DNA of 63,564 nucleotides, counting the filler, from Octopus bimaculoides (Eukaryota): the NCBI RefSeq assembly GCF_001194135.2. It is 10 parts of 10 records of this genome, joined end to end, with 100 filler letters (N's around TTAATTAATTAA, not from the genome) between each part and the next. Parts side by side here need not be neighbours in the genome. Positions count along the whole stretch, not along the records: positions 10,693 to 26,534 come from NC_068984.1; 9 more parts are not named here. One strand, 5' to 3'. Shown here piece after piece: positions 10,724-25,938 of this stretch (positions are counted from its first letter, which is position 1; every line of letters begins with the position of its first letter). A program made the position numbers and the translations under genes. The notes below the pieces were generated by a model. The model made no database searches. It worked only from the letters and a program-made list of their open reading frames with translations, and was not told the origin of the DNA.

Positions 10724-11609
10724 TATATTATACATATATATATATATACTATATAAATTTATGGCTAAGTTAGCGAAATGCTAATTTGAAAATTACAAAA
10801 TAACGTGTATATATATATACAAGTATGCTGAGAAATAACAGACTAATCTTCAGAACGATTCATGGTAGTCTAATACATCAACTCTATTACAGAAAACAAG
10901 TTGACCCAATATATATCCTACAGGCGAGAGATGTACTCAGCAGGTTACCACATGGTCATTCGTTTTGGCCATGCACCAGACGGAGAGCTAAATGTGAGAC
11001 TTCTTTCATTCTCTGACTCCCTATTACTACTAATATATATANNNNNNNNNNNNNNNNNNNNNNNNNNNNNNNNNNNNNNNNNNNNNNNNNNNNNNNNNNN
11101 NNNNNNNNNNNNNNNNNNNNNNNNNNNNNNNNNNNNNNNNNNNNNNNNNNNNNNNNNNNNNNNNNNNNNNNNNNNNNNNNNNNNNNNNNNNNNNNNNNNN
11201 NNNNNNNNNNNNNNNNNNGACTATCCCCCCCCCCTCCTATTCCACAAAATTTCAGGTTTTACACCTAGCAGAAAGTTTTATTCGTATTAATCTCATAAAG
11301 GGAGTGCAAATATGGCTGTAAAGTTGAGAAGTTCAGTTTGCAAACATGCGATTTGGGTTTCAATCCTACTGTATGACACATTAAAGAAATGTCTCCTGCA
11401 CTTCTTATTTTCATCAGCAACGCCGAAATAGTCGATAAAGCCAGCATCCCCAGTGGCACTCACAACAACCTGAAAAATCATTTCAACAGGCTCCTAAAAG
11501 GAATTCTACTGTGATTGAAGATTTCTTTGAAACGTGCCCCAGCATACTCCACACAGCCTTGGTGTCGGGGCTACCAATATATGTGCGAGGTATGGTTAGG
11601 AATATAATG

Positions 11610-12490
11610 CCAGGTGGTATCAAAACGTTCCCAGATTAGTCATGCTTAATAAAACATAACTTATTTACTTAAGTTTTAACATCATCTCCTTCGAAATAGT
11701 CACCTTGCACAGCAATACACCGGTCCCAGCGTTCCTTTTTTTTTCTTTTTTTTTTCGGAATCCGACCTCGAAGTCGTTTTCCGTAAGCGAGTCGAGGACC
11801 TTCTGCGATTGGCTCTGGATCTCGAAAACGGTGTTAAAACGGTGACCTTTGAACTGCATTTTCATCATGAGGAAGACATGGAAGTCCGCAGGTGCAGAAG
11901 CAGCACTATGTTGATTTTTCCGAGAAACTCACGTGTGGGGATTGCTCGGTGACAGGGTGCATTGTCGTCACGAAGAATCCAGTTCTTCGTGCTTCGCAGA
12001 TATTTGCTGAATATCCTCCCTCAAACACTTCAAAACGTCTGGCCCTGGAGGTCGAATTCTCGATGCACAATGCCACATTTCTGGGGGTGGCGCTCGTAGC
12101 AGGTCTTCCAGATCGCTCATCGTCTTCTAGGGACGTTCTTCCGCTTTTGAAGAGCCTGTGCCACTCGAAACATTGCATGCGAGCCATTACCTCATCGCCA
12201 TAAGCTTACCAAAACATACTCTCACGTCTTTGTAGCAGACTTCACAAGTTTGACGCGAAATTTCACGTTGGCTTTTTGTTCCAACTTCCTCTCCATGATA
12301 AGATTGCAGACTACAGCATACACATGATCACAAAAACACAAATTTAACAAGTTGCAAAGTAAACACAACGATGTCACTCGGCACACTTCCTCATGAAGGT
12401 CTCTGATAACTTTCACTGCCCACGCAACCGTGTGCTGTCCTCTGTTGGTGTGCAACAGAAGTACTCCGGGAACTTTTTGATACCACCTCC
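11610..12490 (-). mobile_element. Mariner transposon, internally deleted non-autonomous copy
   Basis: Terminal inverted repeats AGGTGGTATCAAAA(C/A)GTTCCC. Translated pieces CFEWHRLFKSGRTSLEDDERSGRPATS and LKGHRF-like C-terminal segment (MQFKGHRFNTVFEIQ). About 880 bp. Confidence 0.85.
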
Positions 12491-14938: not shown

Positions 14939-15735
14939 AATAAACGAATAACTTGCAATGTTAAAGAATTCAAATGGAACTACTTTGATTCTCCCTCATT
15001 AATGCAACACAGTTGTTGTGAATATGTGACTGAGCAACCTGTTGCTCAGACCTATGCGAAGGAGAACGCGGACAGACACGTTACTGAATGTGGTTAGAAT
15101 TACACAACATTTTATAGCTGTACAACTGAGAAGCGGCCAACTACATAACTGCGACTATAGTTACAACTGCATCTGCAACAGTTATGTTCTCAGGAAAGAA
15201 AATAAATTGGGACTTTTCCAAACTAATATTTCAACCTGTTTACTTCTCTTTCAATACAACAAGGGAACATTGAACAAAAATGACTTCCTCCATGTGAAAT
15301 GTTCCCATCATATACCTTTCCTAGCTCTCTCTTTCCAAAATGTTTCCTTCGTAAATAAATCCTTAAATACTTCGAACTGAAGAGATTTGATAAAGTCAAT
15401 ATGATAATTTCTGTTTTTTGGTTAACCAAAAAACCTCTAACTGAATCCTATATACATACATACATACATACATACATTATTATATTATATANNNNNNNNN
15501 NNNNNNNNNNNNNNNNNNNNNNNNNNNNNNNNNNNNNNNNNNNNNNNNNNNNNNNNNNNNNNNNNNNNNNNNNNNNNNNNNNNNNNNNNNNNNNNNNNNN
15601 NNNNNNNNNNNNNNNNNNNNNNNNNNNNNNNNNNNNNNNNNNNNNNNNNNNNNNNNNNNNNNNNNNNNNNNNNNNNNNNNNNNNNNNNNNNNNNNNNNNN
15701 NNNNNTATACACATATACACACACACACACACATA

Positions 15736-16636
15736 CACGAGGGTGATCCCAAAAGTAAGGTCTCCAAAAATATTTAGAAATCACAGAAACGTTTATTGTC
15801 AATGATGTTTACATCATTTTAAAGTTTGAACATTTATCTATTTTTCTACATAATCGCCATTCCGGTCGATGCATTTTTATAGGCGTTGGGGAAGTTTTTG
15901 TATGCCCATGTCATACTAGTTCACCGCTATGTCGTTGAGGAAGCGTTGAACCCCATCTTTCACCTCGTCGTCGTTGCTAAAGCGCGTTCCGGCCAAATGT
16001 TCTTTCAACTTAGGGAACAGGTGGTAATCACTCGGTGCCAAGTCTGGATTATAAGGCGGGTTGCCGTTTATGGTCTTCTGTGAGCATTCGTGAGACCTAT
16101 CTTGCGCATACCTTCCGATATTGCAATTTTTCACTCAAAACCCTATGAATGGTGCTTAGGGAAACCTCAGGAACCAAAATACGGAGATTATCCAGTGATT
16201 CGCCGGTTTTCACGCAGGATTTGCTTAACCTTTGTGACTGTCTCGTCAGAAATTGATAGTCACCCGCTGCTTTCTCCGTCATGAATTTCAGTACAGCCAG
16301 CTGAAAACTCCCTACACCACTTGCGGACGTTTTTGACATCCATGCATGACTCGCCATACACTTCCCTTAATCGGCGATGAATTTCAATCGGTCTAATGCC
16401 TTTTGGGTTCAAAAACCGAATAACTGCACGAACTTCACACTTGGCAGTAGCATCAATCGGAAGCTCCATCAGATAGGACTGCCAAGCCAAGACTGAGAGT
16501 AGTAGCAAAGCGCGCGCAGGAGCAGGCGCAGGCGCAGGCGCATGCACAACAAAAACAACAGTGTTGCCAACAGCCGTACGCAGTTTCCCCTCGTCCCCAG
16601 CGCTTAGGAGATCTTACTTTTGGTATTATCCTCGTG
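15736..16636 (-). mobile_element. Mariner transposon, internally deleted copy
   Basis: TA-flanked TIRs CACGAGG(G/A)T(G/A)AT..CAAAAGTAAG.TCTCC. HTH peptide EVRAVIRFL..IEIHRRLREVYGE and PPYNPDLAPSDYHLF motif. About 900 bp. Confidence 0.9.
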
Positions 16637-17894
16637 TATATATATATATATATATATGGAACAAAAACGCAACAGAGGACAATAAAACAAACGGACATAT
16701 AGACGATACAAACGCGGACAAGAAAAACAACAATTAGAGGGTCAAGGAAGGAAAAGAGGACGAGTCATTTGTAGCCTTCTTTCGTCAGTCAACTTACCAG
16801 ATGTCCTTACAGGTTCGGACAGTTACATTTGAGATTGTTCGATCTGGTTGCCTCCAAAAAGGTCTAAGCTAAAAGCATTAGATTTTTTGTAAGAAAGCTA
16901 GCGAATGTGTGCGACAACAAAGACAAAAACCTGAGAGCACAATTATACATACATATATATATATGTATATATATATATATAAATTTATTTATGAGGGTAG
17001 AAATTGATATTAATCAATTTGAACCAGTGGTCTAGCATATTAAAAAAATCCGAAATTAAAATTATATTACATACAAAAATAAGAGGGATGACCAGCAAAA
17101 GTGGACTCCTATATGCTAGAAATAGATGCCGAATCATCTAACCACGAAAAAAATATATGTTCTCAGTAAAAATTCAGCGACACAACAGACTGTAAAAGGG
17201 CAAGACAAATGAAAAAATACTAAATAAAAACGATTAACCTACGTACCATAGTTTCACCTGTTAAAATTTNNNNNNNNNNNNNNNNNNNNNNNNNNNNNNN
17301 NNNNNNNNNNNNNNNNNNNNNNNNNNNNNNNNNNNNNNNNNNNNNNNNNNNNNNNNNNNNNNNNNNNNNNNNNNNNNNNNNNNNNNNNNNNNNNNNNNNN
17401 NNNNNNNNNNNNNNNNNNNNNNNNNNNNNNNNNNNNNNNNNNNNNNNNNNNNNNNNNNNNNNNNNNNNNNNNNNNNNNNNNNNNNNNNNNNNNNNNNNNN
17501 NNNNNNNNNNNNNNNNNNNNNNNNNNNNNNNNNNNNNNNNNNNNNNNNNNNNNNNNNNNNNNNNNNNNNNNNNNNNNNNNNNNNNNNNNNNNNNNNNNNN
17601 NNNNNNNNNNNNNNNNNNNNNNNNNNNNNNNNNNNNNNNNNNNNNNNNNNNNNNNNNNNNNNNNNNNNNNNNNNNNNNNNNNNNNNNNNNNNNNNNNNNN
17701 NNNNNNNNNNNNNNNNNNNNNNNNNNNNNNNNNNNNNNNNNNNNNNNNNNNNNNNNNNNNNNNNNNNNNNNNNNNNNNNNNNNNNNNNNNNNNNNNNNNN
17801 NNNNNNNNNNNNNNNNNNNNNNNNNNNNNNNNNNNNNNNNNNNNNNNNNNNNNATATATAGGCTTAATAATATTCGTACCATGCATACTGATGA

Positions 17895-18929: not shown

Positions 18930-19415
18930 TCTATCTTATAGAATCCGGAAGGATGAAAGACAAAGTCGATCAGGTCGCTATATGAACTCAGAACCTAAAT
19001 AGACGTAACTAAATACTTTGAGTGACAGAATTGATGGAGTGTCGGATAAAATGCTTTGTAGTATTTTTTTCGACTCTTTACGTTCTGAGTTCAAATACCG
19101 CTGAGATCAACTATGCCTTTAATATCTTCGTTGTCGACAAAATGAAGCACCAATCATAGTTATAAGAAAACAACTTGCTTTTATTGTTTCCAGTTATATT
19201 CTTTTCTACTCTAGGCACAAGGACCGAAATTTTTGGGGAGGGGACCAGTCGATTAAATCGACCTCAGTACGCAACTGGTACTAAATTTATCGACCCCGAA
19301 AGGATGAAAGACAAAGTCGATCTCGGCGGAATTTGAACTTAGAACGTAAAGACAGATGAAATATCGCTAAGCATTTCGCCCGGTGTGCTAACGTTTCTGA
19401 CAACTCGCCGCCTCT
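18930..19415. mobile_element. Cluster of three SINE family B copies in mixed orientation
   Basis: Minus fragment at about 18930-19000, plus fragment at about 19020-19160, full minus copy at about 19205-19415. Confidence 0.7.
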
Positions 19416-21879: not shown

Positions 21880-22834
<955 letters not shown>

Positions 22835-23655
22835 GATTTGAGAATATTCTGCACAACGAACTTGTTTCTGCTCAGTGGGTGCCATGTCTTCTGACACCTG
22901 ATCAAAAACGCATCAGGCTGATCATATCACGGGAAAGTCTAACATTGTTGCAGGTAGATCTAGCTAGTTTCCTTGAACGTTTTCTCAGCCAAGATGTGTA
23001 TTGGCTTCATCACTATGAGTCAAAGACAAAGAGACAACTAATGCAATGAAAACACCCCTCCTCACCTACTCCAAAGAAGGTCAAGGTCGTTTCATCTGCA
23101 GGGAAGGTGATGACCTCAGTTTTGGGGGATACAAAAAGCATTGTGTTTATTGACTACCTTCAAAAGGACCACACCATGCCATTTACGGAAGCATTTGCGA
23201 AAGCTGAAGCAGTTACGAAAGGCTATCATGACCAAACGGCCAGGAAAACAAACGAAAAGGGTCTTGTTTCATCAGCCCTTGCTTTCAATGGCTGCTGTAC
23301 GTGACTGTGGCTTTGAACTGGTTGATCACCCTCCCTAGTCTCCTGATTTAGCTCTATCTGACTATCATCTGTTCTCCAACATCAGAAAAAAAATCCCACT
23401 TGGCTGAGAACCAATATCGCAGTGATAATGACGTCATATCTGCTGTTGGTGACTTTTTTGACCAACAGGATTAAATTTCTTCACGAATGGGATCCAAGCA
23501 CTGCAACATCGCTGGAAGAAATGTGTGGACCACAAGGGTGACTATGTTGCAAAACAAACCTCATTTGGTCAAATTCCACCAGAATATCTTGGTCAGCCTA
23601 TGAACTTTTCACCTGACCCCCGTATGCCTCTTAGCTTAAATTTTCTATCAGATCT

Positions 23656-24068
23656 TTACTCTTTTACTCTTTTACTTGTTTCAGTCATATGAGTGCGGCC
23701 ATGCTGGAGCACCGCCCTTAGTCAAGCAAATCGACCCCGGGACTTATTCTTTGTAAGCCTAGTACTTATTATATTGGCCTCTTTTGCCGAACAGCTAAGT
23801 TACGGGGGCGTAAACACACCAGCATCGGTTGTCAAGCGATGTTGGGGGAACAAACACAGAAACACAAACACACACATACATATATATATACATATATATA
23901 TACGACGGGCTTCTTTCAGTTTCCACCTACCAAATCCACTCACAAAGCTTTGGTCGGCTCGAGGCTATAGTAGAAGACACTTGCCCAAGGTGCCACGCAG
24001 TGAGACTGAAACCAGAACCATGTGGTTGGTAAGCAAGCTACTTACCACACAGCCACTCTTGCGCCTAC
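23656..24068 (-). mobile_element. SINE family A full length
   Basis: Head GTAGGCGCAAGAGTGGCTGTGTGG through the tail repeats (GAGTAAAA)n. Confidence 0.9.
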
Positions 24069-24076
24069 AAATGAAG

Positions 24077-24497
24077 AATGCTTACAGCACCTAGGTTTCC
24101 CAAGCGGTCACCTATCTAAGTACTAACCAGGCTCGATGTTGCTTAACCCATTACCTATCAGTGATCTCATATGAGATCACTTAAAAATTACAAATTTCGT
24201 AATTATCTGTCAATATTTACACATATCTCACCTTTTTGCTATATCTACTAGGTATATTTCTCTGATATTCAAATGAGGTTTGCTCATTTTTCACCCAATA
24301 TCTCGTTTATTTCTATTTAAAATGTTATTTTGAAATGTTATTTCGATCAGTCCAGCGTGTTTCTAAGGCTGTTTTATGCTAGAAATCAAAGTTTCATAAA
24401 AAAAAAAAAATTCCAGTTAATAGAATTATGGGAGGTAATGGATTAACTTCGGTGATCGGACGAGAACCGGTGCTTTCAACGTGATATGGCTATAATC
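24077..24497 (-). pseudogene. 5S rRNA: Full-length 5S rRNA copy split by a 296-bp insertion
   Basis: Minus 24497-24447 is GATTATAGCCATATCACGTTGAAAGCACCGGTTCTCGTCCGATCACCGAAG (nt 1-51), then TTAA. Minus 24142-24077 is GCAACATCGAGCCTGGTTAGTACTTAGATAGGTGACCGCTTGGGAAACCTAGGTGCTGTAAGCATT. The joined length is about 120 nt and matches the invertebrate 5S consensus. Confidence 0.92.
24147..24442. mobile_element. piggyBac-type MITE
   Basis: TTAA duplicated at 24143-24146 and 24443-24446. TIR CCCATTACCT / AGGTAATGGA (9/10 match). Perfect palindrome GTGATCTCATATGAGATCAC at 24161-24180. AT-rich interior with no ORF in the track. Confidence 0.85.
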
Positions 24498-24989
24498 TTT
24501 ATTAGCAGATAAGGTAAAACCTACAGGTATGTTGCTCTTTACGAGATTGCTGCTTATTTAGTTTGTTAATTTAATGGATTGTTGCTATGTAAGACTTTTT
24601 GTGTTTGTTTGTTTTTGTTTTGTCTTTGGTTCTTTTCATGTGATGCGGTGTGGTTTCATGGATTGCTGGTTTGCAAATTTATCGTGATTCTTGGATTCTA
24701 AATATCTTTGCTTTATCAGGAAAGGATAAATGCTTGATTACATTTACTGTTATCTAAAAGGACATGTATGTGTGTTTGTATGTATGATGCATGTACGTAC
24801 GTATGTAAGTATGCGTGTACATATGTATACATGCATGTATGTATGTATGCGTATGTACATATGTGTGTGTTTGTGTGTGTGTATGTAAATATATGTGTGT
24901 GTGTGTGTCTTTATGTGTGCGTTCTTCGTTAGCTGGAGCAAAACAAGGTAGATTACTTTCCTGGTAGAACTCAATACATGAAGGAAATC

Positions 24990-25230
24990 TTTTACTTGTT
25001 TCAGGCCACACCTTCAGGGGCACCACACCTTCAGGGGCACCACACCTTCAGGGGTTTAATCGAACAATTTATATACTTTATTATTATTTGTTTTATTTAT
25101 TTATTATTTTTTTTGTAAACCTGGTATTTTGTCATCTGTTTTTGCCGAACTGTTAAATTCCGGAGACATGAACAAACCAACACCAGTTGTCAGGCGATAG
25201 AGAGAGACAAACTCACAAAAAGACACACGC
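24990..25230 (-). mobile_element. SINE family A 3' half containing a 17-bp unit x3 (CCACACCTTCAGGGGCA, 25006-25054)
   Basis: Direct reading. Confidence 0.65.
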
Positions 25231-25383: not shown

Positions 25384-25751
25384 GTTTAGATTTAGATTCA
25401 AAATTGAATATGGTACTTATGTTTAGGCACCAGAATATAGTATGGTATGGTATTATACAAAAACCATTCCAAAAACGAGGTGATCAAAAAATCAAAATAA
25501 GCAACACGGATTTTAAAGATGATTGCAGTACGCACGTTTCATGCTACTCCATTTATTTAAGTAATGCGAGCATTACATTAAACGCAATATGTAGAGCAAT
25601 CTTCAGCTGCACGAAAATGCAGAAAATTACAGTAGAATAGACATATTATAATTGTGGCAACATTTCAAATCCAAGTGAGAAGAAGAATACATAAAAATCC
25701 ATCTTGACATAGCCAAGGCTATCAGGCTATCAGGTTTATATATATATATAT

Positions 25752-25912
25752 ATACGACGGGCTTCTTTCAGTTTCTATCTACCAAACCCATTCACATGGC
25801 TTTGGTCAACCCGAGGCTATAAAAAAAAATTTGCCCAAGGTGCCACGCAGTGGGACTGAACCTGGAACCATGTGGTTAAGAAGCAAACTTCTTGCGATGC
25901 AGTGACGTCTGC
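25752..25912 (-). mobile_element. SINE family A 5' half
   Basis: Homologous to 3911-4067. Confidence 0.8.
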
Positions 25913-25938
25913 GCCTATGTTAAGTGTGTGTTTCTGTT

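What the first reader, a model, noticed from the sequence alone, without database searches (positions are those of the whole stretch)
24077..24497. piggyBac-type MITE inserted into box A of a full-length 5S rRNA gene (Pokey-like targeting of 5S?)
Seen: removing 24147-24442 and one TTAA rebuilds a complete 5S rRNA of about 120 nt. The TTAA is 5S nt 52-55 (GAAGTTAAGC), inside box A of the internal promoter. The insert has CCC...GGA ends, a 10-bp TIR and a TTAA duplication. Known: piggyBac inserts at TTAA, Pokey is a piggyBac that targets a TTAA in Daphnia 28S rDNA, and many invertebrate 5S genes carry TTAA here where vertebrates have CTAA. Inference: this may be a non-autonomous member of a piggyBac family that prefers 5S genes as a safe haven. 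I do not know of such a family, but a single copy cannot show site preference.
Basis: partly seen in the sequence, partly recalled or inferred. Interest (0 to 1): 0.85.

Follow-up and report, generated by a model that had tools for sequence, protein, structure and literature searches.

The report
Transposon insertion splitting an octopus 5S gene
A 296-base non-coding transposon of the piggyBac type sits exactly at the single TTAA of a lone 5S ribosomal RNA gene copy in an octopus-like genome. One copy is what chance can give, so it does not show that the element seeks out 5S genes.

Summary
A 5S rRNA gene copy lies on the minus strand (24497 to 24079). It is split at its only TTAA (nt 52-55, inside box A) by a 296-bp AT-rich insert (24147-24442). 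The insert has TTAA on both sides and 10-bp terminal inverted repeats matching at 9 of 10 positions (CCCATTACCT / TCCATTACCT). Removing the insert and one TTAA restores a 121-nt 5S that is colinear with intact 5S genes and keeps 31 of 34 consensus base pairs.

The best reading is a non-autonomous piggyBac-type element pasted in by a transposase supplied in trans. The insertion pushes box A 300 bp away from box C and puts a T13 Pol III stop signal into the 5S sense strand, so the copy should be dead.

The 5S copy is solitary, lacks a T4 terminator, and has three broken pairs plus loop E/box C changes.

The proposed preference for 5S genes could not be tested. No second copy of the element was found in the 15.8-kb piece, in 50 kb of Octopus sinensis DNA, or in any searchable collection. 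Published Octopus vulgaris repeat totals make roughly 1-100 chance piggyBac-in-5S hits per genome plausible.

Verdict: a real but ordinary insertion, and a cheap lead worth one genome BLAST.

The parts
24447..24497 (-). 5S rRNA copy, nt 1-51 (helix I 5' strand, helix II/III, loop C)
   Evidence: Rfam 5S hit 24408-24497, 30.0 bits. 96-98% identical over 48 nt to four of the five intact 5S genes of L001, 81% to the fifth.
24443..24446 (.). TTAA, right copy of the target-site duplication (5S nt 52-55 read on the minus strand)
   Evidence: Sequence. Intact 5S genes have one TTAA here.
24147..24442 (+). 296-bp non-coding insert (MITE-like), 29% G+C, no open frame longer than 41 codons
   Evidence: No similarity to anything else in the piece.
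24147..24156 (+). left terminal inverted repeat, CCCATTACCT
   Evidence: (I3)
24433..24442 (-). right terminal inverted repeat, TCCATTACCT on the minus strand (9 of 10 matches to the left one; the terminal base differs)
   Evidence: (I3)
24160..24181 (.). perfect 22-nt palindrome AGTGATCTCATATGAGATCACT, 3 nt inside the left repeat; no counterpart at the right end
   Evidence: (I5)
24316..24343 (+). 13-bp unit repeated 2.2 times inside the insert
24398..24410 (+). A13 run. Read in the 5S sense it is T13, 32 nt into the insert, a strong Pol III termination signal.
   Evidence: for the coordinates. The terminator role is inferred from established Pol III biology.
24143..24146 (.). TTAA, left copy of the target-site duplication
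   Evidence: (I3)
24079..24142 (-). 5S rRNA copy, nt 56 to the 3' end (rest of box A, intermediate element, box C, helices IV/V, helix I 3' strand)
   Evidence: Rfam 5S hit 24079-24187, 33.8 bits; alignment A1
23655..24067 (-). Context, not part of the element: a tRNA-like SINE that starts 11 bp (24068-24078) downstream of the 5S 3' end
   Evidence: Second copy at 25737-25917. Copies in O. sinensis loci L002 and L003 end at window 24067; those in L004 stop at 24058 and 24079. Sequence.

Best explanation
A non-autonomous piggyBac-type DNA transposon (MITE) was cut and pasted by a transposase supplied in trans. It landed at the one TTAA of a solitary 5S rRNA gene copy in an octopod genome and duplicated the TTAA.

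The hit on a 5S copy is incidental, or at most helped by open chromatin at a Pol III gene. It is not the work of a 5S-specific targeting system.

The insertion separates the first five bases of box A from the rest of the internal promoter by 300 bp. It also places a T13 stop signal 32 nt downstream of the junction in the 5S sense. The copy therefore cannot make 5S rRNA.

Shown: the anatomy (TSD, TIR, exact restoration of a 5S) and the solitary state of the copy. Inferred: the transposase family, the loss of transcription, and the lack of site preference.
For: - Exact TTAA duplication and a 9/10 terminal inverted repeat at the very points where 5S homology breaks. P is about 3e-5 for the repeat alone.
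- The left terminus is CCC. piggyBac elements have TTAA duplications and termini of the form C[C/A/T][C/A/T] (PMC5381638).
- No coding capacity in the insert.
- piggyBac is present and recently active in Octopus: 36 families, 15.6 Mb, 474 recent insertions in O. vulgaris (PMC13282606).
- The window is octopod. Its SINE has 74-94% identical copies in three O. sinensis loci.
- The 5S copy is alone in 15.8 kb.
- TTAA density is 0.005-0.006 per bp. With 9.8 Mb labelled SINE/5S, the expected number of chance piggyBac-in-5S events is about 0.8-98 per genome.
- Reviews list no piggyBac aimed at 5S (PMC10946416; PMC8869645; search).
Against: - Only one copy was seen, so neither mobility nor family size is shown.
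- The repeat is 10 bp, whereas the piggyBac survey gives 12-19 bp.
- The right terminus is ...GGA, not ...GGG.
- No autonomous partner was found.
- A chance hit in any one 16-kb piece is rare in absolute terms (about 1e-4 or less). A real enrichment in 5S genes is therefore not excluded.
- The base-rate figures come from another Octopus species. The 'SINE/5S' label there may cover things other than 5S-like copies that carry this TTAA.
Confidence: 0.65

Rival explanations
1. One reading: the element belongs to a piggyBac lineage that preferentially or specifically integrates at the box A TTAA of 5S genes. This would be a Pokey-like safe-haven strategy moved from 28S to 5S.
For: - The insertion is at the sole TTAA of a 5S copy that still keeps 31 of 34 pairs, including two compensated pairs. 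It was therefore derived from a working 5S not long before or after the insertion.
- A chance hit within one 16-kb piece is improbable in absolute terms.
- Pokey shows that a piggyBac can favour one rDNA TTAA (PMC8869645).
- Other DNA transposons (Dada-5S) and a LINE (Mutsu) do target 5S.
Against: - There is a single copy.
- The 5S is solitary and not in an array.
- No 5S::element junction was found in any searchable collection, although those collections hold almost no cephalopod DNA.
- No such family appears in reviews up to 2024.
- The base rate allows chance.
Confidence: 0.1
2. A soft bias without sequence-specific targeting. An ordinary piggyBac-type element inserts more often into nucleosome-free, heavily transcribed Pol III genes, so 5S copies are hit somewhat more often than random TTAA sites.
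For: From general knowledge, piggyBac integration favours open chromatin and transcription start regions. The 5S copy looks recently functional.
Against: Nothing in this window can measure a bias. The flanks of this TTAA (GAAG/GCAA) are not the AT-rich context that, from memory, piggyBac mildly prefers.
Confidence: 0.15
3. The element is a Tc1/mariner-type (Stowaway-like) MITE with a TA duplication and termini A...T. The apparent TTAA arises because the target happened to be T-TA-A.
For: - The junctions can be read as TA + ACCCATTACCT...AGGTAATGGAT + TA, with a 10/11 inverted repeat.
- Tc1/mariner is about eight times more abundant than piggyBac in O. vulgaris: 119 against 15.6 Mb.
- Two mariner relics lie in the same piece.
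Against: - Only about 7% of TA sites are TTAA in this DNA, and the element would also have to begin with A.
- The CCC directly after TTAA is the piggyBac signature.
- From memory, known Tc1/mariner termini do not look like ACCCATT.
- My rough odds are 9 to 1 or better for piggyBac.
Confidence: 0.06
4. Assembly artefact: a draft scaffold mis-joined a repeat into a 5S copy.
For: The piece is a draft with four N gaps.
Against: A mis-join would not produce an exact 4-bp duplication plus terminal inverted repeats at the breakpoints. There is no gap within 1.2 kb of the locus.
Confidence: 0.02

Closest known systems
piggyBac-superfamily non-autonomous elements (MITEs such as mPok of Daphnia; TFP3/tagalong as a short TTAA-specific element)
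   Same: TTAA duplication, a CCC terminus, short terminal inverted repeats, small AT-rich non-coding body, and precise restoration of the target when the element and one TTAA are removed.
   Different: The repeat is only 10 bp with one mismatch at the outermost base (...GGA). There is no matching subterminal repeat at both ends. No autonomous partner or second copy was seen.
Pokey (piggyBac of Daphnia that favours one TTAA in 28S rDNA)
   Same: A piggyBac-type element sitting at a TTAA inside a conserved ribosomal RNA gene, which it inactivates.
   Different: Pokey's preference rests on many independent insertions in rDNA arrays plus copies elsewhere. Here there is one copy, in a solitary 5S, a Pol III gene unrelated to the 28S site.
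Dada-5S (fish DNA transposons specific for 5S genes) and Mutsu (5S-specific LINE)
   Same: Mobile elements found inside 5S rRNA genes.
   Different: Dada makes 6-7-bp duplications, and Dada-5S inserts at ATTCCCAGGCGGTC, the complement of 5S nt 90-103 or thereabouts. It does not insert at nt 52-55 with a 4-bp TTAA. Mutsu is a retrotransposon without inverted repeats.

Membership tests
piggyBac superfamily (non-autonomous member) | TTAA target-site duplication | tested here: met
   TTAA at 24143-24146 and 24443-24446. Intact 5S genes have one TTAA at this place. The junctions can also be parsed as TA or TTAAC, so a single copy leaves some ambiguity.
piggyBac superfamily (non-autonomous member) | Termini C[C/A/T][C/A/T] ... 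(usually CCC...GGG) | tested here: inconclusive
   The left end is CCC. The right end is ...GGA, that is, TCC on the other strand. The rule is from PMC5381638. The mismatch may be a later G-to-A change.
piggyBac superfamily (non-autonomous member) | Terminal inverted repeats of 12-19 bp | tested here: not met
   Only 10 bp (9 of 10 matches), and it does not extend. Short repeats are common in MITEs, so this weakens the assignment but does not exclude it.
piggyBac superfamily (non-autonomous member) | An autonomous partner with the same termini that encodes a DDD transposase | not testable with these tools
   No cephalopod genome can be searched by DNA here. There is no piggyBac coding remnant in the piece.
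piggyBac superfamily (non-autonomous member) | Multiple dispersed copies (evidence of mobility) | tested here: inconclusive
   No second copy in the 15.8-kb piece, in 50 kb of O. sinensis, in metagenome, viral or prokaryote contigs, or among translated frames in the protein collection. All of these samples are far too small or of the wrong kind.
Target-specific rDNA transposon (Pokey-like) | Repeated independent insertions at the same site of a multicopy RNA gene | not testable with these tools
   Only one insertion is available.
Target-specific rDNA transposon (Pokey-like) | Residence in the tandem gene array | tested here: not met
   No other 5S between 10693 and 26534 (Rfam scan).
Dada superfamily (Dada-5S) | 6-7-bp duplication at ATTCCCAGGCGGTC of 5S | tested here: not met
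   The duplication is 4 (at most 5) bp at nt 52-55.
Functional 5S rRNA gene | Consensus structure and conserved loop E/box C residues | tested here: inconclusive
   31 of 34 pairs are kept, with compensatory U-A at 3/116 and 14/65. Pairs 2/117, 17/61 and 85/92 are broken, and G81A and C95U fall at positions invariant in six reference sequences. The rebuilt sequence could not be scored with the Rfam model.
Functional 5S rRNA gene | Uninterrupted internal promoter and a T-run terminator | tested here: not met
   Box A is split by 300 bp. The 3' flank ATTCTTCATTTG has no run of four T before the SINE begins.
5S-derived SINE head | 5S-like head joined to a SINE body and tail as one repeated unit | tested here: not met
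   The adjoining SINE has its own 5' end at 24067. That boundary recurs in a second window copy and in O. sinensis copies in L002 and L003, none of which carries a 5S. A different 5S-SINE family is not excluded.

The most novel reading that the evidence does not exclude
Octopods harbour a piggyBac lineage, with this MITE as a non-autonomous member, that preferentially integrates at the box A TTAA (nt 52-55) of 5S rRNA genes. That would be the first piggyBac, and the first DNA transposon outside Dada, known to use 5S genes as a safe haven.
Probability: 0.1. Interest if true: 0.75.

Novelty: new member of a known kind. Interest (0 to 1): 0.3.

Why it matters
As it stands, this is one more transposon insertion that killed one dispensable gene copy. 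It would matter only if the preference proved real. Sequence-specific DNA transposons are rare: Pokey for 28S, and Dada for small RNA genes. A TTAA-using enzyme that homes to a 120-bp multicopy gene would be of interest for transposon ecology. It would also interest piggyBac-based targeted integration, since piggyBac is already a workhorse vector. The test is cheap, which is the main reason to keep the lead alive.

Tried and rejected
1. Exact-pattern scans for the element ends and for the 5S/element junction found nothing. I scanned JGI metagenome contigs, IMG/VR and prokaryote genomes. These collections are unlikely to hold cephalopod DNA, so the result is uninformative.

2. I looked for other copies through translated frames.
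   - Exact look-up of five ORFs of the locus: none is in the protein collection.
   - A search with nine concatenated open frames of the insert and its junctions: the only hit was an ORF running over intact 5S genes of another animal. That hit did give useful reference 5S genes.
   - A search with the 133-aa SINE/5S-end ORF: no hits.

3. I used a mariner relic of the piece to reach octopus DNA. Three O. sinensis loci (50 kb) were fetched. They hold the window's SINE but no 5S and no copy of the element.

4. Literature string searches for the SINE and for the terminal repeat returned nothing relevant. No paper links piggyBac with 5S insertion.

5. Readings considered and rejected:
   - Dada-5S: wrong duplication length and wrong site.
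   - 5S as the head of the adjoining SINE: the SINE boundary recurs without a 5S.
   - The Rfam microRNA hits next door: these are microsatellite artefacts.

6. Sola3 may also use TTAA. That is my recollection only; the two papers I opened did not state it, so it remains unchecked.

Full report
**What is there.** Rfam detects two halves of one 5S rRNA on the minus strand. They are 24079-24187 (33.8 bits) and 24408-24497 (30.0 bits). Each falls just under the gathering score of 38 because the model has to skip the missing half. 5S homology stops on both sides at a TTAA (24143-24146 and 24443-24446). Between them lie 296 bp of 29% G+C.

The insert begins CCCATTACCT and ends AGGTAATGGA. This is a 10-bp terminal inverted repeat with 9 of 10 matches, the outermost base being the mismatch, and it does not extend inward (pair I3). 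At fixed positions such a match has a probability of about 3e-5.

Deleting the insert and one TTAA gives 121 nt that align to five intact 5S genes (83-118 bits) on an ENA contig, which I reached by accident. There is no internal gap apart from one small indel near the 3' end. Identity is 87-90% over nt 8-114 to four of them and 81% to the fifth, which carries a deletion. The TTAA is nt 52-55 and is the only TTAA in the molecule. It lies inside box A (+50 to +64 in the Xenopus numbering, from memory).

**The 5S copy.** It is full length and keeps 31 of the 34 pairs of the Rfam consensus structure. Its differences at 3/116 and 14/65 are compensatory (C-G to U-A). It therefore descends from a working, lineage-specific 5S rather than from a long-dead relic.

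It also has three broken pairs (2/117, 17/61, 85/92). It carries G81A and C95U in loop E/box C, at positions invariant in all six reference sequences. Eleven of the twelve window-specific differences at such invariant positions are C-to-T or G-to-A.

Its 3' flank (ATTCTTCATTTG) has no run of four T. Eleven bases after the 3' end (24068-24078) a tRNA-like SINE begins. That SINE is a separate insertion. A second copy in the window and copies in two of the Octopus sinensis loci (L002, L003) end at the same base (24067) without any 5S beside them.

There is no other 5S in the 15.8-kb piece. This is a solitary copy, now somewhat decayed. Whether it was active when hit cannot be told.

**What the insert is.** It has no coding capacity. 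The longest open stretch is 41 codons. Its landmarks are:
- a perfect 22-nt palindrome 3 nt inside the left repeat (24160-24181; I5);
- a 13-bp unit repeated twice;
- an A13 run at 24398-24410.

An exact 4-bp TTAA duplication with a CCC terminus is the signature of the piggyBac superfamily (TTAA duplication, termini C[C/A/T][C/A/T]; PMC5381638).

Because TTAA is a palindrome, the junctions can also be parsed in two other ways. One is a TA duplication with an element that starts with A and ends with T, which would point to Tc1/mariner. The other is a TTAAC duplication. I rate the TA reading unlikely for three reasons:
- Only about 7% of TA sites here are TTAA.
- The element would have to begin with A.
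- CCC directly after the TTAA would be a coincidence.

Tc1/mariner is about eight times more abundant than piggyBac in O. vulgaris, and that still leaves odds of roughly 9 to 1 or better for piggyBac.

Two weaknesses in the assignment remain. The repeat is shorter than the 12-19 bp given for the superfamily. One terminus is ...GGA, which, if original, breaks the terminal-C rule. If it is a later G-to-A change, the copy is probably immobile, because removing the terminal G abolishes excision of piggyBac (cited in PMC5381638).

**How it most likely works.** The following is inferred from established piggyBac and Pol III biology and is not shown here. A DDD transposase from an autonomous relative bound the ends of this element, excised it elsewhere, and joined it to a TTAA with a 4-nt stagger. 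Repair of the stagger duplicated the TTAA.

In the 5S sense, the first five bases of box A now sit 300 bp upstream of the rest of box A, the intermediate element and box C. A T13 run lies 32 nt into the insert. TFIIIA/TFIIIC could not assemble on the split promoter in register with the old start site, and any read-through would stop at T13. The copy is dead as a 5S gene, just as Pokey or R2 kill the rDNA unit they occupy.

**Is there a preference for 5S?** This is the interesting part of the finding, and I could not test it. No collection available here can be searched for cephalopod DNA. Pattern scans of metagenomes, viral contigs and prokaryote genomes found nothing. Translated frames of the element have no relatives among 5.8 billion proteins. 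The 50 kb of O. sinensis that I could reach through a mariner relic contain the window's SINE (74-94% identity, which places the window in an octopod) but no 5S and no copy of the element.

What can be said concerns base rates. A 2026 census of O. vulgaris lists 9.8 Mb as SINE/5S (4 families), 15.6 Mb as piggyBac (36 families, 474 recent insertions) and 119 Mb as Tc1/mariner (PMC13282606 and its supplement). TTAA density is 0.005-0.006 per bp. With generous ranges for copy sizes, the expected number of purely accidental piggyBac-in-5S insertions is about 0.8 to 98 per genome. One such case is therefore not evidence of targeting.

On the other side, meeting such a case in one 16-kb piece is rare under the chance model. 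A family that really favoured 5S would make it much less rare, so I leave the targeting idea about a 10% chance. I also keep a separate soft-bias rival, in which open chromatin at Pol III genes raises the hit rate.

**Comparison with what is known.**
- Pokey is the only piggyBac reported to favour an rRNA gene (28S). It is known from many insertions in arrays as well as elsewhere.
- The 5S-specific elements on record are Mutsu, a LINE, and Dada-5S. Dada-5S makes 6-7-bp duplications at ATTCCCAGGCGGTC near nt 90-103. Neither matches a 4-bp TTAA duplication at nt 52-55.
- A 2024 review of rDNA-transposon relations and my searches list no piggyBac in 5S genes.

If the preference were real it would be new. 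As observed, this is a new, single, probably immobile member of a known kind of element.

**Verdict.** The piggyBac-type MITE reading is well supported but not proven. The 5S preference is untested and not favoured. Interest is low to moderate as it stands. The lead can be settled by one BLAST of the 296 bp against any octopus assembly.

Noticed in passing
window 23655-24067 (-) and 25737-25917 (-); L002, L003, L004: An abundant tRNA-like SINE with box A/B-like motifs, an internal TA/TG microsatellite and an (AAAGAGT)n tail. Copies that are 74-94% identical lie in three Octopus sinensis loci, which places the window in an octopod. One copy starts 11 bp after the 5S 3' end, where the Pol III terminator would be expected.
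   Followed up: partly
window about 15706-16600 (-) and about 11219-12300 (-): Two internally deleted, frameshifted Hsmar1/SETMAR-like mariner relics (HTH and C-terminal parts kept, catalytic core missing). The closest full-length relatives (up to 79% identity) come from unnamed assemblies. Named hits include Octopus, bees, a bichir and ticks, a spread that suggests horizontal transfer.
   Followed up: partly
window 24776-24888: Rfam E-value hits to mir-297, mir-1277, mir-3149, mir-466 and others fall on a TG/TATG microsatellite and are far below the gathering scores. They are composition artefacts, not microRNA genes.
   Followed up: yes
window 25006-25054: A perfect tandem repeat of a 17-bp unit (CCACACCTTCAGGGGCA, 2.9 copies) in otherwise AT-rich DNA.
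   Followed up: no
window 18936-18999, 19075-19141, 19286-19352: Another short repeat family is present as two direct copies and one inverted copy within 420 bp (81% identity). It is possibly a second SINE or MITE family.
   Followed up: no
window 21971-22345 and gaps 11042-11218, 15492-15705, 17270-17853, 22346-22788: A long (ATT)n microsatellite faces an (AAT)n tract just before an assembly gap. Four N gaps show that the piece is a draft scaffold.
   Followed up: no
L001 (ENA ERZ26859061 contig ctg13296, 10388-16978): An unidentified invertebrate contig carries five 5S genes in both orientations at irregular spacing (83-118 bits). One has an 8-nt deletion. A gene caller had read a 196-aa 'protein' straight across two of them.
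   Followed up: partly
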